From NCBI GenBank assembly GCA_051294905.1, contig CM119383.1, positions 9,672,001 to 9,736,000 of the forward strand: a stretch of DNA of 64,000 nt, written 5' to 3'. The position numbers and the translations under genes are program-made. The DNA comes from Botryllus schlosseri. Its lineage: Eukaryota. This document shows positions 5,428-24,600 of the stretch, one piece after another. The notes beneath the pieces are model-generated. The model worked only from the letters and a program-made list of their open reading frames with translations, was not told the DNA's origin and did not search any database. Positions within the stretch are counted from its first letter, which is position 1. Each line of letters opens with the position of its first letter.

Positions 5428-6648
5428 TCTTCGCACCTTGTTGTTGGCATTCAGCAGCGACTATATGATATCAACCACTGAACTGGGAATATTCAACATA
5501 TGACCTCGGGATAGAGTTTTCGTAGACGCCGCAAATGAAAGATTGAAAGTATGCAAAAGCCATCGATTCTATTCAATTCTTACGCTCGCTGCGTTTGCGA
5601 CATAGACCAAATGAATTTCATTTGTCCGCATCGAAGACGTAGGCTTTCAAGCTGAGGGTTGTAGTAAACCATGCTGCGTTCAGACCTCAAAAGACATTGC
5701 CCAGTTACGTAACTCTGACAAATGACAATTGATATAAATAACCATTTGGCAAGGACATTCAACGAGACAACGTAATTTCTGCATGAAACGCTAGGCTTTG
5801 AGTTAATAATTCAAACGTTATCTAAAATTTTCCGCCTTGAGATATGATCTTACAATTATTCTCAGTAATATATGTCAAAGCAATACGCAACGAGGAATGT
5901 TGGTTCTGATATATTTTGTCGCATCAGAGCCAACGATGTACCAAACTGTTAATGTAAATCCTCACACTTTGACGTGTAGAGCGTTGCATGTCAGTCGAAT
6001 TTAAATATTTATTGATTTGCATAAATACGAATATATCCAGCTGCGGATATTCGTCTATAATAGACTATGAATATCACACGCCTTTTATTGCAAGCGATCA
6101 ACTCAGCGAATAGCGTTTGTCGGCAGTATACGCTCAATTCGATGCTCGAGGCATGGCGTCAAGTTTATGGAAGCAAATCTCTTCGATCGAAATTTCAAGA
6201 TTTTCAGGACTTCGAGTGGTAAACCACGCGCAATGGTTGCGATAACGCCGTCTAGTATATTGCTCACCGTCAATACTAGTAGCATCACTACTCTAGGATA
6301 GGTTGGTCAAACACCGTAGCTGTATCCACACAAAACACTATCCCAAAATAAGTGCACGGCATTTTATTAATGATACCAGGTATATATAACATTCAAAGCT
6401 GAACACCGGCCAGTATTTCCAATTAGGATAAATTAACTCTCGCTGTATTTGTTTATGTGTAAATATATAAATATATATATATATTTTTTCGACTAGCGAC
6501 GAACAGTATGTTATGCCAATAGCTCTGTCCCAAAACACAAAATCCATAATAAGGGTAATGCTTTCGACATCTGCTAGCCTACGCCTCATACACTGAACAA
6601 TAGTAGTGTCGATTCAAACCACCAAAAGTGATAGGTTGAGAATCGTCG

Positions 6649-8213
6649 TCACTCGAGATCCTTTGACGGGAAGTACATGGCTACAGCGAGACAGTTTCGA
6701 AAAGCTTCCTCGATTAATCGCTTCTCTTTTCCTGACGTCGAGAGAATCAAAAAACACGGATGATCCAGATCCAAATTATGCGACGACGTGTCACGGGACT
6801 GTGGTGCTTTACTGGTGTCGTGCGCCGGCGACTTGGTCACCAGATCAGCGCCGCTGCTGGATTCTGGGGATATTGATGTTGTTGACTGTATATGTTTGGC
6901 ATCTGAGGTTTGTTTTGTGGATATGCTACCGTTTATCTCGTCTGAATTGAGCGGCTTGGTCTGAAATGTGACTACCGTCGTCGCTGGCCACATACTTTCT
7001 GAAGATATTTCGTCTAAGCGATTGGGTGCTTCAGTAGTTTCCAATGAACTAGGGTTGAATTCCACTAGTTCTATTGACTCCTCCACTATATTATCGGTGA
7101 CATTCGTCGTCAACCACATGCTTTCTGAAGATATTTCATCGAATCGATTGGGTGCTTCAGTAGTTTCTAATGAATTAGGGTTGAATTCCTCTAGTTCTAC
7201 CGATTCTTCCACTATATTATCGGTGACATCCGTCGCCAACCACATGGTTTCTGAAGATATTTCCTCCGATCGATTAGGTGCTTCAGTAGTTACAAATGAA
7301 GCAGGGATGGAGTCATGTGATTGTGTCGAGTTTTCAACGGTATTGTGGTTGACATCCGTTCCAATGTACCACGTGCTCTCTGAAGATATTTCATCCAATC
7401 TGTTAGGTGCTTCAGTAGTTGACAATAAAACGGAGCCGAAGTCGTCTGGTTGTGTAGAATCTTCAACGGAATTGCCGTTGACATCCGTGCCAAGAAACCA
7501 CATGCTTTCTGAAGATATTCCATCCAATCTATTAGGTGCTTCAGTTGTTACTAAGGAAACAGGGCCGATGTCGTCTGGTTGTGTCGACTCTTCTACGGTA
7601 TCGTCGGTGACATGCGTTTCAAGCCACATACTTTCTGAAGAGATTTCGTCAAATCGATTCGTTGTTGCGGTATTTAGTAATCCATTGGAGTTCAGACGAG
7701 CTGTTGTTGTCACGCTTATCGAATCTGTCACCACAGTATCATTGTGTTCTGCTTTGAGCGAATTCTTCTCCGAAGATACTGCATACCGCCGATCGGGTGT
7801 TTCGCCAGGTGATCTGGTAGAACTGTAGCCGATTGTTTGTGATACGCCATTTGCGGTTGTATCGTTGTTATAGATCTTTACGTCTGTTGAATCTTGGTTG
7901 TATATCGACTGCGCTGTGGTTTGGATCGGTAGATTAGTTTCAGTCAAATCGCTATCGTAAGTTGGCAAAATGCTTTCGGAGGAGATTTCATTCCCGCGGA
8001 CTGGTGACGGAGTAGTTTGTAAACGCAATGATCCAAAAAGCATGCCCTGTTCCGCCCTGAAGGAATCGGTATCGCTATCGAACACGGGTGCACGTTTGGT
8101 AGACATCTCATGAGAAAGATGTGGTGCCGAAGCCGTAGACTGTTCTATTGGCGTGATTGGATTCTGCTGGCGGAGGAACTGACTGGATGGCATTCCACAT
8201 CTCCTTATGCTCA
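6649..8213 (-). CDS. Gene A terminal exon: ~520 aa Ser/Thr/Glu/Asp-rich mucin-like region with six 42-43 aa repeats
   Basis: 1.56-kb open frame, ttgcag acceptor in the matching phase; no good donor found before the TGA at 6649-6651. Confidence 0.88.
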
Positions 8214-11200
8214 CTGCAATTACATATGTATGAACGATTTACGATGAATCGAAAATATAGTAGATCGATTACGTTATGCTATCTTCGATAGGACATTTTA
8301 ATTTCAACACTTCATATTCCCATAATATTAGTGCAATAACTATACAGTGTGTGTATGTATGTATATCTTGTCATGCAGTATTAAAATCTAAATAGCAATA
8401 TAATGTAGCTGCTAAGAGGACAAAGTATGCTTAACAACATTCTGTAGACTGTGTGGGCTGCGTGTCCTCTGCCCAACCTAAGGTATAGTCTCAATATTGG
8501 CAAAGAGAATTTAGCCTCAACTATCAAAGCTGCAATTACGTAAAAGTTCGTGATTATCGCTATGAGGTAGTAGTGCGGAGCGGATCGACAAATTCTCTGG
8601 TCCGGCTCCGGCCGCATCAGGAAAAGTACTGATCCGGCTCCAATCCGGTTCCGGCCAAAAATGAAAAAGTCAGGCCAGAAATCCGGCCCTACTCGGTACG
8701 GAGGTTCCGTGAATTGATAAATATGCCTCGTTTATGTTCACACTGGCTTGGTGGTGATTTACGTGTGGTTCGTTGGTAGTTATATAGTTATAAAAGTCAT
8801 GCTTATCCATAAAGATTCTGGCCGGATCAAAAAAGTAGTGATCCGGCTCCGGCCGTAACAGAAAAAGTACTGATCCGGCTCCGATCCGGTCCGGTCAAAA
8901 TTGTAAAAATCCGGCCGGATATCCAATCCGGCTCCGGTCCATGATCCGCACTATGAGGTAGATATCAGTGTTGGGATGACTCGAGTCATGACTTGACTCG
9001 AGTCAGACTCGAGTCACCTTTTTCGTATGACTTGACTTGACTCGAGTCAATTTACTAAAATGACTTGACTTGACTTGACTCGGCGTATCAAAAATGTGGA
9101 TTGACTCATGACTCGGAGCAAAATTCACGAGTCAATTTCAAGTCATCAAGTAATCGGTGTCGATAAAAATCATTGTATCTTGCACATGGCCGTATTGCTC
9201 GCGAAACGCTCGTGTAACCCGCGAAATCGACTAATCAATCAACGATCTTGCGTTTCACTGTGCCTTCATTGTTCTTTCTCAAATAAATTAACTGCAAACG
9301 AAGTGATCGAAGCTTATAGCTTACGATGTCGTAAACTAGTATAGTAAAGTAATTTAATAGTAAAATGTATATTTCTGTTTTCTGTTCTTACCTTAACCAA
9401 ACCTCTTGGTTGATTGAAATTGAATTCGAATATAGTTTATATAGTAATCAACCATTGGCGCAGGCTCGAATGTTTGTAAAGTGCATCTTATCAATTCGTT
9501 TCTCTATTCTCTATTTTGGCTGGTAACTATAAACTGAGGCTATGCAATTACTTACGTAGTTTAGCAGTTCTAGGTATATGTGAGCGATACAGCGTCTTCT
9601 TTCGTGTATATATAACTCTATATTCGTTTATTGGTTTAGAATCAATGACCACTCAATATGTATTTCAGACAGCCAGCAAACTGAAATGACAAAATCATGC
9701 CTCATACTTCGAAAAGCCAACTTGACTTGAATTGTGACTTGACTCGTGACTTGACTTGACTTGACTCGACTTGACTCGAGTCAACTCCAAAAATCGAGTG
9801 ACTTGACTTGACTCGAGTCACTTTCGAAAATCGATTGACTTGACTTGACTCGAGTCAAAATGTGCAATGACTCGAAATGACTCGTGACTCGAAGGTAGTG
9901 ACTTGATCCCAACACTGGATACAAATGTCCACCCAAGTAGTTTATTGATGGAGATGAAAGTCAGGTAACTTCATATGTTGAGACGTGCATATAAGAAATC
10001 ATATTCCAATTTTTTTGCGATTCAAACTTGGAAATGTTGAGAACATCTTTTCTACGCTAATGGGTACCTTGTGACAGTATATACGGTGTACCCGTGAAGG
10101 GAAAACGCAGTACCTTTCCCTGCAATGAAAAGAATTCCCTACACTTGGTTGCTTCACGCAGTCCACTTTCCCGGAACCAAACCGGAAACATCTAACAGTT
10201 GTATTCTAAATACATTGTATTTTAGCCTATACGTGCCAGAAAGTCAGTGGAACGTCTGCTGGTAGCGTCTTTAATATTATGTTATTCAAAAGCTGTACGC
10301 ATGAAATTGCAATAACGTGCAACGGCTGAATATTAGTTGGTCTATTTATGACACCTATTTAAACTTTCGAATCCGGTCAACTGGATTATAGTAATTAATA
10401 TCATACCGCGGTCTATAATAATATAGGTATCTAAATATGATACGATTGTGCTTACCAATGTTCCTGTCATAATGCCGTGAACTGTAGAAACTCATAGAAT
10501 TTCTTCTAGAAATGCTGACTTGCCCATACTGCTCCGTAGAGCTCACACCAAGCACCAGATCGAATCGCAGAATTCTACCACTTTCGGGATCCACATAATA
10601 GATGCGCCCATGATAGGACAGTATGCTGTTTAATTTGGATCGATTGAAAATAGTAGTGAGTTTTCCGACCTGAGCATTTAAATTTGTTCATGCATGTTAT
10701 GTTCTTCTTACTCAGATATGATTGTTCCAGTTTTGAACTCCGGGTTAGTTTCGTAATCGAGATGGACTGGAGGAGCGTGATTCGTCAAAGTTTCCATCAA
10801 ATCCAAGGGCATCATGTACAGCATTCTACCGGTCTCGCTCATAACGTTCAACATGTACACTGAATAGAAAAGCGATCAAATCCCAACAAGCCAAACAGCA
10901 TAGACTGTCCACTGTCGTGCAGGAGTGCTCAACCTGCGGCCGCGAAATAAAATTCTGTAATTCAAATTTACCCTAGTTGGCGGCCAAGCTGGGATACGGA
11001 AAAACAACGAAACCGCAGTTGAGTTTCATCATTCCTTGCGAAAATTTCACACGCAAGATTCTGATTGCAGTACGTTTCAGCCGTTAATTAGATACCTGTA
11101 GTATTGTGAATATATGTGCGCCTTAGCCACGATTGCCTTCAGTATTTATGAATGGAATATTGGGCTGTTCGCAGTGTTTATACGACGTTCAGAGTCTCTT

Positions 11201-14108
11201 ATCAACAAAGTGAATTGATTCGGCGCCACGTGGTGGTCGCAGCCCTATTTCCGTTCTATACTATATGCAAATATGCTAAGATATTCACAAGAAACCAGCT
11301 GAGAGACGACAAGAGATGTCCGGGTTGCCAAATCTTCGGTAGTCATATACATAGATATAAGGCTCCCTGATATATGATTTGGATGCGTTCAGTGGCCGCC
11401 TTTACAGTGGTTCAATGGATGGCGACCGTACGCTGCAATAGTATTCGAAATGCGACCGCGAATATACCAAAGCGTGCCCGCGCCTGCTGTAGACCAGAGA
11501 TGTGCAACGTTTCTGAGAGCGGGCCAGTTATAGATAACGGGTTGATACCGCTGGCTGCGCATACTTTCTAGTATAGTAGTAGCACGGCCCATCATCTCAC
11601 GATGACGAGACAGTAAGCTGGGATATCGGACTATATACATAACAATAATTCATAATTGGAGTTCATACGCGCGAAATGGGAAAAGATTCCAGGTCATCGA
11701 ATATATTTCTTCAGAAACGTTCATGTTCAAAGTTAGTAGACCTATATATACATATTTTAGTTATTAATCTTTTCGTTCCGTTCTAGTTAACTAACTTAGC
11801 TAACATATACCAGTCCATCAGCTAAATTGGATAGCGGACTGCACAAATGGGGCTGCATATGTGGGCTTTAGGTTGCACACCCCTGCTGTAGAGAGCGTAT
11901 ATGACGTAGATCTGAAGAATTATTACTTTCGTAATCCACCGCAAGTGCATAAAGTGTTGTTTTCGTCTCTAATACCATCTGCATGCTCGACCCGTCCGAG
12001 TGCATTCGCCATACCTCTCCCTTTTGAGAACTAGATGCATTTGTCTGCGTCCAGTAAACCTGGCTGCGACGGAAGGATATTCTCAAATGATATAACAAAA
12101 CATTATAGTCTCTTATGACAAAATGGGTCCGAGCTGTCCATCAATTAGCTTTTGTGCTTGTCGAAATTTGCAGTAATAAAATAATAATTACCGTTTCGAA
12201 CGCAGAATGTAAATAATTCTGCTTACAAACGAAGTATAAATTCAATTTCATATCGGACTCTTACCTGCGTTTGAAATCCAAGGTAATGCTGAATATTTTG
12301 CTCTGTTGAGTTGGAGCCGAAAGAAGCGTTTGATACGACCTTCCTTTCATGTCCCATTTATATAAACCGGTGTCGGTATTCCAGAATAAGTTTCCCCCGC
12401 ACGGATCAATCTCCATATGCGTGACTATGACAATCATGTTTCAATAAGCGATGAGTATAAGTTTCAAATTTATCCGTTAAAACAATTATGTCCGAAACTT
12501 TCACTTGTCCATACCACAAATCAAAAGAATGTACAGTGTAATGTTCAATGTTTTCCGCGATGAGCGTGCAACGATATTGTAAAATACGTTCGCTATAAGT
12601 TCCCCCTTCGAAACGAGCATCGTTAGACTCGCTGAACATATCTTCTGTCGTTATCCTCGAATTTTGTTAGGCAGCAATTTGTTGGTACGGATGGTTTTAC
12701 TTCTTAAATAGTGAGCTAGTAACAGTATACACCACAACAAACTTTTTGGCACCGTATATGCCCCCTAGACCCAGTGCCCATATTATGTTCGCTATCGACA
12801 TTCTCTCCGCAGCCACTTCGCGAGGATGTCGAGTATATACGGCATCGTGCAGTAACGAATTAATCGACAAACGATTAGATTACATTTTTTATATAATTAA
12901 TTAGACGACAATGATGTTATTTTTCAACTAAGCGATATCCACCGCCGAGGCCGACACGTAATTACATTATAAATTTCATCACAAATCATCGCCTATACGT
13001 TAAGTCTCCGAGTTAAATATTCAATAGGACCGTATAATATAACATGTAGTACTTCGCGTAGGCCCATAGTATGAGGCCCTGACGTAAGTCTCAATGTCGA
13101 GAACTGCAACAATATGATGTGGAAAAACTTGAAGTCATTTATGTCTTACCCTTTTCTTCAAATGGCACACTATTGAGTCCATAAATTATTGAGTTCGTCT
13201 TTGAGCTTTGGTATGCCATCTGACCAGTGGCCGGATGCAAACACATCGCCTCTGCGTCTTCGTAAACTTTCGTTGCAGTCATAAAATGAAGGAAATAGTA
13301 ACCTCAGAGTGAGGGAAGGGGTGATATTTGCAGAGATGCGGAATAGCCATATGCAGAGGTAACAGTTCAGCAACGGAGTATTTACTTTCAAGATAGCACA
13401 AATTCGTAGCGTCATTAGTACCTTTTCGAAAAACCAAACATCTTGCAACTTGAAAAGTAGTGACTACCGTGTAAATGCTGAAGGTATACCATCTCCCGAC
13501 CAAATCTACTTTCTGTAACTATCTACCTCAGCACTTGTCGGACCTTTAATTTTATACTACCACTTGAAGCAGTTTTGACATGTCTTGGAAATCGATGCCG
13601 CTACTTTGTAATTGACAAGGAGATGACGTCGTGACTTCTACTCCTATTTGAGTGGCAACGCCGATTACTTTGACCACCTCTGGTTAGAACGTTGTCATTA
13701 AATTACGAAGGCGTGGTGATAAACTGTAGTGTTGTTGGTAACCCAACATAGTAATTATGCACCGCGACCCACATATAGACGAATGCAAGGCCCAACTTAA
13801 TTGACGACAGGCTCATCAGCACGGAAAACCTCCTACTCACTTTGACCGGTCAAAACATTCGTGGTCACTCCATCTGCGCTTTCTTGCAACCCTACTTGTA
13901 CTCCCAATTTTCTAACCTTGTCATGTACCATGATATAATCATCGTTTAAGAAGTCTGTAATTGAGAAATGTAGGGTAGCTCATCAGTTGAGTAAAATACC
14001 CTGGAATGTGCGACATCACTTACCAGTTAGCACCGCTTGTTGCTGCTGTGATGTGAATGGTAAGTAAACCAGACTGATGCTACAAAGTAATATCTCTGGT
14101 GGACGCAT
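6649..14108 (-). CDS. Gene A: putative secreted protein, signal peptide + divergent YWTD-like beta-propeller + acidic Ser/Thr-rich tandem-repeat tail (~913 aa, 10 exons)
   Basis: Phase-consistent model totalling 2742 nt. Blade motifs include MEIDPCGGNLFWNTD, ITLDFKRSQVYWTQ, LAVDYE and GRIYYVD. Exons 3-5 are the least certain. Confidence 0.75.
6975..7660 (-). repeat. Coding tandem repeat, six units of 126/129 nt (TTEAPNRxDEISSESMW...)
   Basis: Anchor tctgaaga at 6998, 7124, 7250, 7379, 7508 and 7634 (periods 126,126,129,129,126). Confidence 0.95.
8571..8953. mobile_element. hAT-type MITE, 383 bp, perfect 8-bp TSD
   Basis: TIR TAGTGCGGA/TCCGCACTA, TSD TGAGGTAG on both sides, (GAT)CCGGCTCCGG subterminal arrays. 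Confidence 0.93.
8966..9917. mobile_element. hAT-like non-autonomous element, 952 bp
   Basis: TIR CAGTGTTGGGAT/ATCCCAACACTG, dense GACTTGACTCGAGTC arrays at both ends; no clear TSD. Confidence 0.85.
10456..10625 (-). CDS. Gene A exon 9
   Basis: ILSYHGRIYYVDPESGRILRFDL; phase 2/1, GTAAGC donor. Confidence 0.85.
10712..10859 (-). CDS. Gene A exon 8
   Basis: Only the required phase-1 frame is open; GTAAGA donor. Confidence 0.8.
10920..11885. mobile_element. hAT (Charlie-type) non-autonomous element, 966 bp
   Basis: Ends CAGGAGTGCTCAACC and GGTTGCACACCCCTG; flanks ctgtcgtg/ctgtagag (6/8). Confidence 0.75.
11927..12063 (-). CDS. Gene A exon 7, YWTD-like blade
   Basis: QVYWTQTNASSSQKGEVWRMHSDGSSMQMVLETKTTLYALAVDYE. 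Confidence 0.88.
12265..12424 (-). CDS. Gene A exon 6, YWTD-like blade
   Basis: THMEIDPCGGNLFWNTDTGLYKWDMKG...ITLDFKR. Confidence 0.85.
13150..13302 (-). CDS. Gene A exon 5
   Basis: AMCLHPATGQMAY blade and strong GTAAGA donor; 5' boundary uncertain (GAG acceptor). Confidence 0.6.
13422..13512 (-). CDS. Gene A exon 4 (tentative)
   Basis: KVDLVGRWYTF resembles AVDWVGRNLYW; phase 0/1 fits neighbours. Confidence 0.45.
13561..13679 (-). CDS. Gene A exon 3 (tentative)
   Basis: ttctaaccag acceptor, GIDF blade-like motif, weak donor, following intron only 48-51 nt. Confidence 0.45.
13841..13954 (-). CDS. Gene A exon 2
   Basis: ttctcaattacag acceptor, GTGAGT donor, open in phase 1/1. Confidence 0.7.
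14024..14108 (-). CDS. Gene A exon 1, signal peptide-like (MRPPEILLCSISLVYLPFTSQQQQAVLT)
   Basis: ATG, hydrophobic core, GTAAGT donor. Confidence 0.7.
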
Positions 14109-16122
14109 TATGCATGCACTTTCAGACCGGTGATGAAAAAGCGCCTATCCTCCAGCTGTCACGAACCACTGGTCCTGCGTCTATATAATATTCATCTATT
14201 GTTATGAGTCTTTATATGCATCAAAATGTATTTGGTATAGTAAACATCGTGTTACGATAGCAAAATTGCGTAAATTCATTCCAAGGTAAAGCATCGTCTA
14301 GTTTAATTTAATCATATTATGACCTCCAACTGGCCCTGTCGTAGTTTCAATGACTAAACGATTGCTGATTGATATTGACATTACGCAATACTATACAACT
14401 CAGTATTAGAAACAGCAACTGCATGTATGTAACGCATTCGAATAGAGATATATGGTGCCTTCAGTGTTAATAAATAAATTATTATAGATAAGGGATGGAA
14501 CTGAAATAGACTTTACTAAGTTCTAGCCTCTGGCGAATAATAATCAGTTAATTTATCGTTTTTGTGGATGACGGTTTATCGTTTATGCGGATGATAAGGA
14601 ATTTCAAGATTGTTCTTGTAATACCGGTAATCACGAAATGTGTGTACGAAGGGCGTCAGTCAAATTATGCAACAAATATCCTTGGAATATGACCAGACCA
14701 TATGCATACAAACCTGCATTTATTGCGGAGACAGACGTATGTAATTGTGTAATGCGTATAGCCTATATTTACAGCTTTAATATCGTTTGAAAGATTGATA
14801 CCGATAAGTTCAGTATCATGGAGAAGAGAACGCTGTCAGGGATTCCACATCAGTAACAATTGGGACGACACCCCCGGCTACGCCAGGAACGATTTAAACG
14901 TCGTTTAAAGCAGGAATGTCAAACGCATCAATAGCGAGTGAACGAAACAAATACGTTCAATAATCAGTACATATCGATCAAAAGCAGGGATTTAAGAAAT
15001 ACCAACGTGAATATATAATCTTTCGAAACAGCAAATGTCGAACCGCCCCGTTCAACCACAATTTAACGATCCGACGGCAATGTTGCGTTTCGCTCTAGTC
15101 GCCATCGACGCCGAAATCCAAGAAAGTACAAAAGCACACCTGCACCTGCACACTCAGATTTCATGAAGAGTGAACCGAAAGTCATTCAGAGAAGCGGAGA
15201 CGGCGATGCTAAACCGTTGTATGCAAATTACAGCACTAATTGAAAATGTGATCTTAGTAGGCCACAGCCACACTCTCATTCATAGAATTAGCAACTTTTT
15301 ATGTAGCCTAGTCCTAGTGCTCAAATAACACAATACAAATAGGCGTGTATCTGGATGGTCGCACCCCTATAACGTCTAACTAAAAAGCTCCCCGCGCGAC
15401 CTCATTTGGTCTATTCTATTCAGCAAATGTGGACTTCCAAGGTATGTCAAGATCAGTAAAAATTAATTCTCATATCCCACTGACTTTGGTGTGGTAATCT
15501 GGTTCAGTGAGTCTTCACTAAAGAAAGGAAGAAAGCCGAGAGATCAAGATCGAACAGGACGAGGTAGATGTTGGATTAGGAGACCGTAATTGGTGGTTTC
15601 GACATTCTTCTATCTGTTCGTGACATCGCATCGTGTCTTGAATGTGTATCTTGATCGCATGAATATGTTAAAGCCAACGATTATGCGCTCAGCTCATGCT
15701 TCTATCTTGCTATCAAGTTCATGAATTTTGATCAAAATATCAAGACTACTGAATAATCTGCTATTTCAAACCTATTTTCACTTTCCAAAGTTCGTTTGCG
15801 AATACATATAACTGCGAAATATCGCCGAATGTTTGCACGTTGCACCACAACTTTATGGATCACAAGTGTGAAAATCAACCAAACGTTAATGCCTTTCATA
15901 TCGCTTGCGACGCTGAATTGTGGGATTCGCTAAAGAGTCCGTGACTTTGGATCACCTAAATCACGTGAGAGTTCATCGACCCGAGTACGCCAGTGCTCGG
16001 AGGCTGGGCGGGCGTCGACACGGCTTTGGTGGTCGATCTGGAATTCTCCCAGTCATTGCCGCTACTTGCGCGGAGACCGCATACAGTCAAGCCGTCGTAG
16101 CTCTATGGGTAGAGCTACGCCG

Positions 16123-21600: not shown

Positions 21601-24600
21601 CCAGCCCAGGCACAACAAAACCATAGCAATACAGAGGGTCGACCCGAAATCACGTCCGTCGCAACAAACTCACCCTGTCCCTAGACAGCATCTGCGCCCG
21701 GTTCTTGTGTTCGATTTTGATCACACCGGGAGGCTGCAGCCACGCCTCGCCATCCACTTGAAGCGGCACACCCTCGTCACCTGAAATCAACAACAGATTG
21801 TGAGTCGACGCACGGGATACCCTCACATCTCACAAACAGTCAGGCACTGTATTTCAGATATCAAAGGTATTTGTCTGCCACCCCACCTAAAATCGTGATT
21901 TTGATCGATCTGCATTGTGCTATCCTGTGACTCTGCAGCACGCCTTCCGGGACCACCATGGCCATCCCCAGCTGCATGGTGCCGTACACCGCCACCACCT
22001 CCAGCACCCTGTCGTTGTAGGACGGCGCCATGAACGTGTTGTTCCCGGTCCGGCCGCCCCAAAAGTTTGAGCCGCCCATGAAAGAGGGGATGTTCAGCAC
22101 GACGATGCCTTGAAGTCGAGGTAACGGTATGTGCTGGCCGTCACATTCCAGCCGTATCCTCTGCTCCAGGTTCTTGTAGGTTTTCAGCGCAAATTCCCGG
22201 GTGGCCAGCATGCCGTACCAAACCATGTTTTTTGTTCGGCTGTAATCAAATAAAGAGATTGGACTAGGGTTGTGCGACCTTTTTGACGAGGGCTGATATA
22301 ATAAATTTCTTGCGGAGAGCAGTCCCATTATTTTGTTGAGAATTGATAGGGGTGATGTAAAACACATCATTAGAGCTCAATATAAAACGACACTTTGAAA
22401 TTATTATTACACATAGGTAAATCACATATTTCTGATCATGTTTAAAATAATATGTAAAAAATATTCATGGGGAAAGTCATCATATGCGTATCTTAGTGTT
22501 TAGTGCTTAGTTCAATAGTAACAGACTACAAGCTCAATCGGCGAGTCATTATGTTAAAAATTTGGCACTTCTTCTTGGGTCGTAAATTTGGTGTTGCACA
22601 CTCCTCACTTACACTGTCCCCTCGGTGGTAAGATATAGAATTTACAGTTAAATACAAGCAGAGAAATCGTTGTTGGAGTGCACGGTCTAAAAACTTCAAC
22701 AATCCTATCCAACAACGAGCGTGACAACACAAACGGGCAAGGCTCGAGATAACTTTCAAAGTTACAATTCCAGCGAATAACGCCAGTCGACTCCAGCAAT
22801 TTTGAAAAGCAACATACTCTCTTCGACACCTCTAGCTTGTTGCATAGAAAGTCACGCGCAAATTTGCTATTATTGTTCTACGATTGAAATTGTTTCGCTT
22901 TGTTCCAGCAAAACAGATCGTTCTGGATTAGCAATGCTGGAAGACGCCGCTAGTTATCGACAAGAAAACACGTGCGTCACACCGAACCGTACCACTCATT
23001 TCCCAGTTTCGCGTACCAGAATAGCATTACTCAAACGTCGGAACGCTTCAAAAACTTTTCACTTGTACATTCATAACACCAAGAAGAATAGAATAACTAA
23101 TTTGAGACTGCTAGCACAGGAAACTGGGAGTTGTCGGTGCCATGACCAGCAACCCCGTCGGTATTCTGATATTTTTTCTTTAGTCGGCATCATATTCGAA
23201 AATGACAGAATGACTATAAACTCAGATCTTCGCATCAAACAACAGGGGAAATAAGATGGCAAAGTCACAACCAGAACACACATCGATCATAATATCACCA
23301 ATTACGCAAAATCTGCTAATCGAGCAACTGAAAGGCTTGCGTCATGCGTAACTTAGCGAGTTCTGAAGCAAACCTGCATTTCTTGGGGTGTTCTTCCCGT
23401 TTCCTGTGAAAGTCCAACGCGATTTTCGCGTCCAATCCAATCCCGAAATAATTGTTCATCACACACTTTTCCGAGAACAGCGCGTCCACTCTGCAACAGA
23501 ATACCGATTTTTGACAGCACGCGAAACAACCAAAATCGCTTTTCAGCACTCACATAGGACTATTGAAGCTCATGAGCGGCGTGGCTGCCGCACACAACGC
23601 GTCCGTGTTTGCCAGTATCACCCGACCGATCAGACCTTTTCGGATCGTGAAATCGGGGTTCACTGTCAATAGAGAATAACATTGTGTGACCTTAAACTTT
23701 CAATAATAATCAAAATCGGCGCAAAATGTAATTACGACACAGGTATGCAATACAAGAATTTAATAATGAGAAGTATGTTGCTGTCTTTCCGATCACATAT
23801 GCTCTGCATGGTTCTATTGAAATTGCAGCAAGACAGTGTCCTGTCAAAACCACAGACTCGATGATAAGAGCACATTTCATCGGTTCCTACCGTGCGAGCA
23901 TCCCCTTTCCTCGCTGATAGAGCAACGGCTGTTGTCTTGTTTCGAGCTGGCGTTCAACCCTAAAAAGCATGCGAATTGCGTCACCCCATGCCTGCGGTCA
24001 TTTCAACAGTTACAAATGCGCACATCATGATAGCCAGAAAAATTGAAGCGCTTTTTAAACACTGGCAATAAAAGGGTGGTACACAGACTACACTTGATCT
24101 TCAAGGAGGGAAATACTGATAGAATGGTATTCTAGAATTGAGCGTGTGAGAGCAAAAATCAAAGATTTATCAGTAACTGTCAGCATAATAATACAATCAT
24201 ACTGGCCAAGTAAATGCAATCATTCATCCTCGCTGATTCTTAATAGTTTTATTGGTCCTTCCAAGAAAAACAGCAGATTACTGCTCAAATACGACACACT
24301 CAATCAAACAAACAATTGATTGAGAATATTGGAATGAAACACAAGCTGCTAAGCAACAAATCACAACATTGCGATGAGACTGTTGTTCTACTACTGCAAA
24401 CGTCGGTGCTGCGTCACAATATCTATCCATCCCGAAAAAATTCTATAGTTAAGGTTTCGAATACTCTTTCCATGAATATGACATCACTAACACTGTAGCA
24501 GCTATTGTCGTAAACATTGCCAAGATACAAATATTGAAAATGAAACACTAAGACTTCATAATTACACAAAGCAATAACTTTATATTGCTGATTGACAAAA

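What the first reader, a model, noticed from the sequence alone, without database searches (positions are those of the whole stretch)
6649..14108. Unfamiliar secreted architecture: stand-alone YWTD-like propeller fused to an acidic repeat tail, no EGF/LDLa/TM
Seen: a phase-consistent 10-exon model with a signal-peptide-like start, about 6-7 divergent blade motifs, a ~520-aa S/T/E/D-rich terminal exon, and a short tail with two Cys and no hydrophobic anchor. Known: YWTD propellers in LDLR/LRP, nidogen and pro-EGF are normally followed by EGF modules and often a TM segment. Inferred: a lineage-specific extracellular matrix, tunic, adhesive or mineral-binding protein in which a propeller binding head sits on an extended glycosylated or phosphorylated stalk. 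I do not recognise it as a named gene.
Basis: partly seen in the sequence, partly recalled or inferred. Interest (0 to 1): 0.75.

Follow-up and report, generated by a model that had tools for sequence, protein, structure and literature searches.

The report
Secreted single-propeller protein, acidic repeat tail
This is a real, expressed sea-squirt gene for a probably secreted protein: one LDL-receptor-type beta-propeller joined to a long acidic repeat tail, an offshoot of a tandem ascidian family known only from automatic annotation, and its function is untested.

Summary
Spliced contigs from three studies give 8 exons, not 10 (minus strand, ATG 14108, stop 6651-6649, 831 aa). The proposed exons near 13679-13561 and 10119-10068 are not used.

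Residues 29-310 are a divergent six-bladed YWTD propeller with roughly one blade per exon. They align along their whole length with the second propeller of Styela clava XP_039264376 (172.9 bits). That propeller folds confidently and matches only LRP6, megalin, nidogen and LDLR propellers. Pfam's Ldl_recept_b model does not detect the single exons.

The host is an ascidian. The gene heads a tandem array of five propeller-EGF-propeller genes on the same strand. All share its terminal-exon plan: a phase-1 intron after blade 6, a Cys, a linker, a Cys pair, then the stop. This gene lacks propeller 1 and the EGF. Its linker has grown from about 25-35 to about 480 residues, with six 42-aa acidic repeats, and that exon is unique in the genome.

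An orthologue in another species keeps the exon-4-to-terminal-exon plan under purifying selection. There is no EGF, LDLa or TM segment. Function (an extracellular binder on a polyanionic stalk) is inferred only. The signal peptide and the 3' end remain unverified.

The parts
14211..14216 (-). TATAAA, candidate core promoter about 100 nt upstream of the ATG
   Evidence: Pattern search. The longest spliced contig reaches about 14152 (X1 record 5, 856 nt). Its promoter role is inferred only.
14024..14108 (-). Exon 1, coding part: ATG and aa 1-28, a signal-peptide-like start (MRPPEILLCSISLVYLPFTSQQQQAVLT)
   Evidence: Joint 14024|13954 in three runs. In-frame stop 12 codons upstream. Highest hydropathy of the protein. 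No signal-peptide predictor was available.
13841..13954 (-). Exon 2, blade 1 (DFLNDDYIMVHD...)
   Evidence: Joints. Aligns with the start of propeller 2 of P0057 and of own-genome paralogues.
13150..13266 (-). Exon 3, blade 2
   Evidence: Joints 13841|13266 and 13150|12424. Colinear with P0057.
12265..12424 (-). Exon 4, blade 3 (IDPCGGNLFWNTD)
   Evidence: Joints. 50% identical to the orthologue in L029.
11927..12063 (-). Exon 5, blade 4 (VYWTQT ... DGS ... LAVDY), the most canonical YWTD repeat
   Evidence: Joints. Its only other genome-wide hits are four exons that all score with PF00058 (18.9-31.8 bits; three reach the 21-bit cut-off). The profile that includes it hits LRP2, LRP4, LRP6 and nidogen.
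10712..10859 (-). Exon 6, blade 5
   Evidence: Joints. 55% identical to L029.
10456..10625 (-). Exon 7, blade 6 (RIYYVDPESGRILRFDL ... FYSSRHYDRNI)
   Evidence: Joints. 64% identical to L029. The blade-6 profile retrieved the ascidian family.
6649..8213 (-). Exon 8, terminal: aa 311-831 plus the TGA stop. It runs VSIRRC, then an acidic S/T-rich linker of about 480 aa, then a Cys pair.
   Evidence: Joint 10456|8213 in three runs; X16 record 8 runs on about 916 nt into it. Open frame. Composition. Unique in its own genome. Same intron position and phase as the terminal exons of paralogues A and D.
6988..7674 (-). Six tandem 42-43-aa repeats (aa 491-719) with the conserved core TTEAPNR[LF]DEISSESMW
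   Evidence: TRF period 126, 5.3 copies, 79% matches. Repeat list. In the core, pN is 0.02-0.19 against pS 0.14-0.75.
6652..6762 (-). C-terminal Cys-pair motif (HPCFLILSTSGKEKRLIEEAFRNCLAVAMYFPSKDLE)
   Evidence: 48.6% identical over 37 aa to the C-terminus of the orthologue in L029, E 3e-7. The same C-x(20-24)-C-then-stop plan is seen in P0057, P0023 and genes A and D.
6363..6368 (-). AATAAA, candidate poly(A) signal 281 nt after the stop
   Evidence: Pattern search. Not verified with reads.

Best explanation
The locus is an expressed ascidian gene of 8 exons encoding an 831-aa, probably secreted protein.

Shown:
- Residues 29-310 are a divergent six-bladed YWTD (LDL-receptor class B) beta-propeller with roughly one blade per exon.
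- The single terminal exon follows directly. It starts with a Cys (VSIRRC), carries about 480 residues of acidic S/T-rich sequence including six 42-aa repeats, and ends in a conserved C-x20-C motif.
- The gene is the upstream end member of a tandem array of secreted signal-propeller1-EGF-propeller2-short linker-Cys pair genes. It keeps only propeller 2 and the terminal exon, has a first exon of its own, and has a linker about 15 times longer.

Inferred:
- The protein enters the secretory pathway.
- The propeller acts as a protein-binding head, as in nidogen, LRP4 and LRP6.
- The tail acts as an extended, glycosylated and/or phosphorylated polyanionic stalk. Its conserved 17-aa repeat core is itself a binding or modification site.
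- The odd number of Cys in the mature protein may allow disulfide linking to a partner or matrix.

The tissue and the ligand are unknown.
For: Gene model: seven canonical joints appear in contigs from three studies, giving an intact 2493-nt frame. The genome holds no second copy of exon 5 or of the terminal exon. That makes a retrocopy an unlikely source of the spliced contigs, so they most likely derive from RNA.

Propeller: an HMM of propeller 2 from three own-genome paralogues scores aa 29-310 at 49.9 bits, against a maximum of 9.5 in 1000 shuffles. Offline phmmer gives 172.9 bits to Styela clava XP_039264376 (our aa 26-339 against its 363-678) and 115 bits to S. clava XP_039253081. The AF2 model of the Styela propeller has pLDDT 88 and pTM 0.88. 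Its best 50 PDB matches are all YWTD propellers: LRP6, megalin, nidogen 1NPE and LDLR 1IJQ, with TM about 0.70.

Family context: five propeller1-EGF-propeller2 genes lie on the same strand at C13:9.526-9.675 Mb. Their terminal exons share the phase-1 intron after blade 6 and the Cys / linker / Cys-pair / stop plan.

Constraint: a contig from another species (L029) carries exons 4-7 at 48-64% identity, pN 0.27 against pS 0.77. It also has an acidic terminal exon that starts NLRRC and ends in the same Cys motif. The repeat core is under purifying selection.

No TM segment. No EGF, HYR, sushi or TM exons were found in the window.
Against: - Pfam's Ldl_recept_b model does not report any single exon, and the exons are not among the genome-wide candidates.
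- The spliced protein could not be handed to Pfam, a signal-peptide predictor or AlphaFold. The fold is therefore shown only for a homologue about 36-40% identical.
- The signal peptide has no clear A-x-A-type cleavage site.
- The last ~650 nt of the terminal exon and the poly(A) site were not checked with reads.
- Similarity of the Cys tail to the Styela and paralogue tails is a shared pattern, not a significant alignment.
- Nothing here bears on tissue, ligand or modification.
Confidence: 0.6

Rival explanations
1. It is only the 5' part, or one isoform, of a larger ordinary receptor gene. On this reading the big exon is spliced before its stop to the propeller-EGF exons that begin about 4 kb downstream on the same strand.
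For: A family member with propeller 1 (window 2608-2126 and 694-569, minus strand), an EGF and a second propeller follows directly downstream. The 3' third of exon 8 and the region below 6649 were not covered by the single read-laying run.
Against: The stop falls 13 residues after the last Cys, as in the orthologue (7 residues) and in every relative examined (3-17 residues), which also end there. AATAAA lies 281 nt after the stop. The resulting order (propeller 2, tail, propeller 1, EGF, propeller 2) is seen in no relative. X16 record 8 runs unspliced for about 916 nt into exon 8.
Confidence: 0.07
2. It is a transcribed but functionless remnant of a partial tandem duplication. On this reading it is a decaying gene copy whose tail is drifting low-complexity sequence.
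For: It lacks propeller 1 and the EGF that its five neighbours keep. Blades 1, 2 and 5 are very divergent. Depth in the one raw-read RNA run was very low (X22). The tail has no relative in any database.
Against: The 831-codon frame is intact with all seven introns spliced. An orthologue in another species has pN 0.27 against pS 0.77 over 198 codons and a conserved tail start and end. The 17-aa repeat core is held nearly constant while synonymous sites differ.
Confidence: 0.1
3. The tail is not a passive stalk. It is an array of short ligand motifs, each carrying P-N-R-[L/F]. These resemble the N-x-I/V peptides that dock on the top face of YWTD propellers in DKK1/SOST-LRP6, laminin-nidogen and agrin-LRP4. 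The protein would then cross-link its own or its neighbours' propellers.
For: The repeat core is under strong purifying selection, unlike the rest of each unit. The genome encodes many partner propellers in the same cluster. The N-x-I/V rule is recalled from the published complexes; three of them appear among the fold matches (3SOV, 1NPE, 3V64).
Against: The orthologue's tail has different repeats (DWTTTKT) without this motif. A three-residue resemblance is easily chance. The one complex prediction tried gave no answer either way.
Confidence: 0.08

Closest known systems
Styela clava XP_039264376 ('low-density lipoprotein receptor-related protein 2-like', 731 aa; P0057) and the five double-propeller genes next to the window gene
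   Same: Propeller 2 is colinear with window aa 26-339 at roughly 36-40% identity (172.9 bits). The intron after blade 6 has the same position and phase. The terminal-exon plan is the same: Cys, S/T-rich linker, C-x(20-24)-C, stop. There is no TM segment.
   Different: Those proteins have a signal peptide, propeller 1 and an EGF module in front, and a linker of only 22-35 T/P-rich residues. The window gene starts with its own exon 1 directly before propeller 2. Its linker is about 480 acidic residues with six 42-aa repeats found nowhere else in the genome.
YWTD-EGF domain pair of the LDL receptor family (LDLR 1IJQ, LRP6 E1-E4, LRP2/megalin, LRP4)
   Same: Both are six-bladed propellers built from YWTD-type repeats. 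The blade-4 profile that includes the window exon hits LRP2, LRP4 and LRP6. The fold of the closest homologue superposes on them at TM about 0.70.
   Different: The window protein has no EGF module after or before the propeller, no LDLa repeats, no TM segment and no cytoplasmic tail. The sequence is too divergent for Pfam PF00058 on single exons.
Nidogen G3 propeller (1NPE), a secreted matrix adaptor
   Same: Both are secreted, non-membrane proteins in which a YWTD propeller is the binding head. Nidogen is among the best fold matches and is hit by the blade profile.
   Different: Nidogen has NIDO, G2, EGF and thyroglobulin modules and an EGF after the propeller. No homology exists outside the propeller. 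No laminin-type ligand is shown here.
Ascidian receptor type (YWTD propeller-EGF)x2-HYR-sushi-like-mucin-TM, at C13:9.826 and 9.928 Mb, C5:0.769 Mb and C12:6.034 Mb; Ciona savignyi H2YXX4
   Same: Its second propeller is exon-for-exon homologous to the window propeller.
   Different: The receptors continue with EGF, HYR, a sushi-like module, a T-rich mucin region and a TM helix. The window gene has none of these.
Acidic secreted phosphoproteins and mucin-like stalks (SIBLING/SCPP-type proteins)
   Same: The likeness is in composition only: pI 4.05 and D+E 22% in the repeats, S+T 27%, 18 S-x-E sites and 7 N-x-S/T sites.
   Different: No sequence relationship exists. Phosphorylation, glycosylation and mineral binding are untested.

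Membership tests
YWTD / LDL-receptor class B six-bladed beta-propeller | Six consecutive repeats of about 45 residues with a YWTD-type strand-2 motif | tested here: met
   Six exons (aa 29-310) of 38-57 residues. The motifs LFWNTD, VYWTQT and IYYVDP are clear; blades 1, 2 and 5 are degenerate.
YWTD / LDL-receptor class B six-bladed beta-propeller | Match to Pfam PF00058 (Ldl_recept_b) above its cut-off | tested here: not met
   No PF00058 hit at E<=1 on any single exon. The exons are not among the 65 genome-wide candidates. The spliced protein could not be scanned because it has no reference.
YWTD / LDL-receptor class B six-bladed beta-propeller | Demonstrable homology to accepted YWTD propellers | tested here: met
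   The only other genome hits of exon 5 are four exons that score with PF00058 (18.9-31.8 bits; three reach the 21-bit cut-off). The blade profile A1 hits LRP2 at 2e-15, LRP4, LRP6 and nidogen. The paralogue HMM gives 49.9 bits against at most 9.5 in shuffles.
YWTD / LDL-receptor class B six-bladed beta-propeller | Closed six-bladed propeller fold superposable on LDLR, LRP6 or nidogen | tested here: met
   Met by proxy only. AF2 of the colinear Styela homologue (P0057:358-665, with window exons in the alignment) gives pLDDT 88, and the best 50 PDB matches are all YWTD propellers. The window protein itself could not be folded.
YWTD-EGF domain pair (LDLR family, nidogen, pro-EGF) | An EGF module directly after blade 6 that packs on the propeller | tested here: not met
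   Blade 6 is spliced directly to the tail exon (joint 10456|8213). No EGF-like exon was found in the intron or elsewhere in the gene.
LDL receptor family receptors (LDLR, LRP1/2/4/5/6) | LDLa (class A) repeats, a TM helix and a cytoplasmic NPxY-type tail | tested here: not met
   No Pfam hit on the exons. No hydrophobic segment outside the N-terminus. The stop follows 13 residues after the last Cys.
Ascidian secreted double-propeller family (S. clava XP_039264376 type) | Terminal exon after a phase-1 intron behind blade 6: early Cys, S/T-rich linker, C-x(20-24)-C, stop | tested here: met
   Window: VSIRRC ... C797-x20-C818, then the stop. Genes A and D: RPIC ... C-x22/23-C, then the stop, with the same intron phase. 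The pattern is the same in P0057 and P0023.
Ascidian secreted double-propeller family (S. clava XP_039264376 type) | Signal peptide, propeller 1 and EGF in front of propeller 2 | tested here: not met
   Exon 1 joins blade 1 of propeller 2 directly. No propeller-1 or EGF match lies upstream of 14108 in the window.

The most novel reading that the evidence does not exclude
The selectively conserved 17-residue core of the tail repeats (TTEAPNR[L/F]DEISSESMW) is a functional docking unit. One possibility is an N-x-hydrophobic ligand for YWTD propellers encoded in the same gene cluster, which would make a self-assembling multivalent extracellular network. Another is a Trp-bearing, phosphorylatable unit that binds the cellulose or mineral phase of the tunic. 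Either way, a YWTD propeller would have been freed from its obligatory EGF partner and re-used as the head of a new kind of matrix protein.
Probability: 0.08. Interest if true: 0.7.

Novelty: new variant of a known kind. Interest (0 to 1): 0.4.

Why it matters
YWTD propellers are normally described as YWTD-EGF pairs inside large receptors or matrix proteins. Here a propeller has no EGF on either side yet remains under purifying selection. This gives a natural test of whether the EGF partner is needed for folding, or whether the conserved Cys tail replaces it.

The locus also shows how a new secreted protein arises. A member of a tandem family lost its front half, gained a first exon, and inflated a 30-residue linker into a 480-residue repeat array.

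The surrounding family has at least five secreted double-propeller genes plus four or five receptor-type genes. It carries only automatic 'LRP2-like' or 'vitellogenin receptor-like' names, and three literature searches turned up no study of it.

The practical importance is modest until the expressing tissue and a ligand are known.

Tried and rejected
- An exhaustive search for phase-consistent exon chains timed out. It was replaced by RNA joints.
- Pfam on single exons gave no informative hit.
- The word-based protein search found nothing with the tail exon. With the Styela propeller region it found only the query itself.
- phmmer of exon 5 alone against PDB gave only chance-level hits.
- The ESM Atlas gave no usable hit for the tail.
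- tblastn of the model against the window found no paralogue of the whole gene there.
- The C-terminal 60 residues do not align significantly with the Styela or Clavelina tails. Only the pattern and the intron position are shared.
- An alignment meant for folding the propeller together with the Cys tail misplaced the tail fragments. It was not sent for folding.
- Complex prediction of the Styela propeller with one window repeat returned no answer (score 0.00). It counts neither for nor against binding.
- Literature searches (ascidian + YWTD; Styela clava + LRP; the Logan run accession) found nothing relevant.
No joints use them. Only low-depth unspliced contigs cover the first, and the second breaks the frame.
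- A GPI anchor was considered and rejected. The C-terminus has no 12-20-residue hydrophobic end.


Full report
OBSERVATION. The minus strand between 14108 and 6649 carries open stretches in changing frames, flanked by AG/GT. I laid contigs of three likely RNA runs from three studies (X1, X16, X17) and raw reads of one RNA-seq run (X22) on window 8120-14119. The three contig sets agree on seven joints, all CT..AC on the plus strand, which is GT..AG on the minus strand: 13954|14024, 13266|13841, 12424|13150, 12063|12265, 10859|11927, 10625|10712 and 8213|10456.

This gives eight exons: 14108-14024, 13954-13841, 13266-13150, 12424-12265, 12063-11927, 10859-10712, 10625-10456 and 8213-6652. The stop is at 6651-6649, the CDS is 2493 nt and the protein is 831 aa. 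The one at 13679-~13561 is covered only by low-depth unspliced contigs. The one near 10119-10068 is 52 nt long and would break the frame.

Exon 5 and the terminal exon occur once each in the 495.5-Mb assembly. That makes a retrocopy an unlikely source of the spliced contigs, so they most likely derive from RNA. The few X22 reads lie with the first mate on the plus strand, as expected for a minus-strand RNA in a standard stranded library. The longest X1 contig extends to about 14152. An in-frame stop lies 12 codons before the ATG, and TATAAA sits at 14216-14211.

THE PROTEIN. Residues 1-28 are MRPPE followed by a 13-residue hydrophobic stretch, the only hydrophobic segment of the protein. Residues 29-310 are six units of 38-57 residues, roughly one per exon. 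Residues 311-831 come from the terminal exon, with S+T 27%, D+E 16% and pI 4.3. This exon holds six 42-43-aa repeats (aa 491-719; pI 4.05, D+E 22%) with the core TTEAPNR[LF]DEISSESMW. It has seven N-x-S/T and 18 S-x-E sites, and Cys at 316, 797 and 818.

IS IT A YWTD PROPELLER? Pfam finds nothing on the single exons, and exon 5 alone finds nothing meaningful in PDB. Four other lines of evidence support the assignment.
- Searching its own genome with exon 5 returns, besides itself, four loci. All four also score with Pfam Ldl_recept_b (18.9-31.8 bits; three reach the 21-bit cut-off).
- A profile of exon 5 with those four blades hits LRP2 (2e-15), LRP4, LRP6 and nidogen.
- The four loci are receptor genes built as propeller-EGF-propeller-EGF-HYR-sushi-like-mucin-TM. 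Their second propeller has one blade per exon, like the window gene.
- An HMM of that propeller from three paralogues scores window aa 29-310 at 49.9 bits, colinear from blade 3 to the end of blade 6. The best of 1000 shuffles scored 9.5.

CLOSEST RELATIVES. A blade-6 profile searched against 1.84 billion representatives retrieved ascidian proteins (names). Offline phmmer with the spliced protein gave the following.
- 172.9 bits to Styela clava XP_039264376 (731 aa, 'LRP2-like'), window aa 26-339 against its 363-678.
- 115 bits to S. clava XP_039253081.
- 49-73 bits to proteins of Clavelina lepadiformis and Ciona savignyi, and one unlabelled JGI/IMG protein (P0008), that carry EGF and, in most, HYR after the propeller.

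The host is therefore an ascidian, probably a stolidobranch; the species was not determined.

AlphaFold2 of the Styela propeller (residues 358-665, with window exons among the alignment rows) gave pLDDT 88 and pTM 0.88. Its 50 best PDB matches are all YWTD propellers: LRP6 E1, megalin, nidogen 1NPE, LDLR 1IJQ and LRP4, with TM about 0.70 and E from 1e-15 to 1e-12. The window protein could not be folded because a spliced sequence has no reference. The fold is inferred from a colinear homologue about 36-40% identical.

GENOMIC CONTEXT. The Styela protein is built as signal peptide, propeller 1, EGF, propeller 2, a short T-rich linker and a Cys pair. Searching the genome with it shows a tandem array on the minus strand of contig C13, from 9.526 to 9.675 Mb. 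The array has five genes with propeller 1, EGF and propeller 2. The window gene, at 9.678-9.686 Mb, sits at its upstream end. The nearest array member begins inside the window (propeller 1 at 2608-2126 and 694-569) and continues beyond the window start.

Two members were read in detail. Blade 6 ends with a phase-1 intron. The terminal exon reads RPIC, then 22-35 T/P-rich residues, then C-x22/23-C, then the stop. The window gene has the intron at the same position and phase, and reads VSIRRC, then about 480 residues, then C-x20-C, then the stop.

The window gene is thus a family member with three changes. It lacks propeller 1 and the EGF; none lies upstream in the window. It has a first exon of its own. 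Its linker has expanded into an acidic repeat array. That exon has no match elsewhere in the genome, in the 5.8-billion-protein search or in the Atlas.

CONSTRAINT. A 3982-nt Logan contig from another species (L029, found through the 79-aa hit P0002) carries exons 4-7 at 48-64% identity. It also has a terminal exon that starts ANLRRC, runs about 260 acidic S/T-rich residues (pI 4.4 over the 219-aa called product) with different Trp-containing repeats, and ends HPCFKIL...AFQLC...stop. That ending is 48.6% identical to the window tail over 37 aa, E 3e-7.

Over 198 propeller codons, pN is 0.27 and pS is 0.77. Among the window's own repeats the 17-aa core shows pN 0.02-0.19 against pS 0.14-0.75. 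The core is therefore held by selection and not merely copied recently. L029 starts at exon 4, so it cannot show whether the orthologue also lacks propeller 1.

HOW IT LIKELY WORKS. What is shown is an expressed, constrained gene encoding a YWTD-family propeller, an acidic repeat exon and a conserved Cys tail, with no EGF, LDLa or TM. The rest is inferred.

YWTD propellers are extracellular modules, so exon 1 should act as a signal peptide. The propeller should be a protein-binding head, as in nidogen, LRP4 and LRP6. The tail should be an extended polyanionic stalk, probably glycosylated or phosphorylated. Its conserved core would be a site of binding or modification. The mature protein has five Cys, an odd number, which may allow covalent linking. 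Tunic, matrix, adhesive and mineral roles remain guesses.

RIVALS.
- A larger gene that splices on into the neighbour. This is unlikely given the conserved stop and the AATAAA at 6368-6363, but it was not tested with reads.
- A functionless remnant. This is contradicted by the intact frame, the orthologue and the selection signals.
- A ligand-array tail with N-x-L/F motifs for propellers. This is speculative, and the single complex prediction gave no answer.

NOVELTY. The gene is a new variant of a known kind. The module is a known one and the family is visible in databases under automatic names. However, the EGF-less single propeller joined to a unique acidic repeat array did not turn up among the relatives retrieved here or in three literature searches.

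Noticed in passing
window 8966-9917: The large intron holds a 952-bp element bounded by 12-bp inverted ends (CAGTGTTGGGAT at 9917-9906, its complement at 8977-8966), with internal GACTCGAGTCAAGTCA repeats. Summed contig depth is in the tens of thousands, and reads from many other copies run off exactly at 8966 and 9917. It looks like a very high-copy MITE-like DNA transposon.
   Followed up: partly
window 8580-8960: A second repeated element, rich in GGATCCGGCTCCGGCC-type palindromes, with depth in the hundreds and several internal rearrangement joints in the contigs.
   Followed up: no
window 2608-2126 and 694-569 (minus strand), continuing in L024 (C13:9662001-9672000): The next gene downstream on the same strand is a family member with propeller 1 (35% identical to S. 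clava XP_039264376 over 173 aa), an EGF (L024 5792-5670) and a second propeller (L024 3697-2918).
   Followed up: partly
G000 C13:9.526-9.675 Mb, minus strand (L030-L033 for two members): A tandem array of five propeller1-EGF-propeller2 genes ending in a short T/P-rich linker and a Cys pair. They look like secreted proteins without a TM segment and carry only automatic names in other ascidians.
   Followed up: partly
L016, L018, L020, L022 (C13:9.826 and 9.928 Mb, C5:0.769 Mb, C12:6.034 Mb); further hits at C13:9.810 Mb and C5:0.797-0.804 Mb: Four or five receptor-type paralogues built as (YWTD propeller-EGF)x2-HYR-sushi-like-T-rich mucin-TM. L016 looks incomplete or more degenerate.
   Followed up: partly
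window 21861-22370 (minus strand): An exon encoding a diacylglycerol kinase accessory domain (PF00609, 5.9e-28). This is the next recognisable gene upstream.
   Followed up: no
window 14093: All three contig sets and 5 of 5 raw reads show C instead of T. On the coding strand this changes codon 6 from ATA to GTA (Ile to Val) in the signal-like peptide. About half of all laid records are only 95-99% identical, so the species is highly polymorphic.
   Followed up: no
They probably come from pre-mRNA or DNA carry-over.
   Followed up: no
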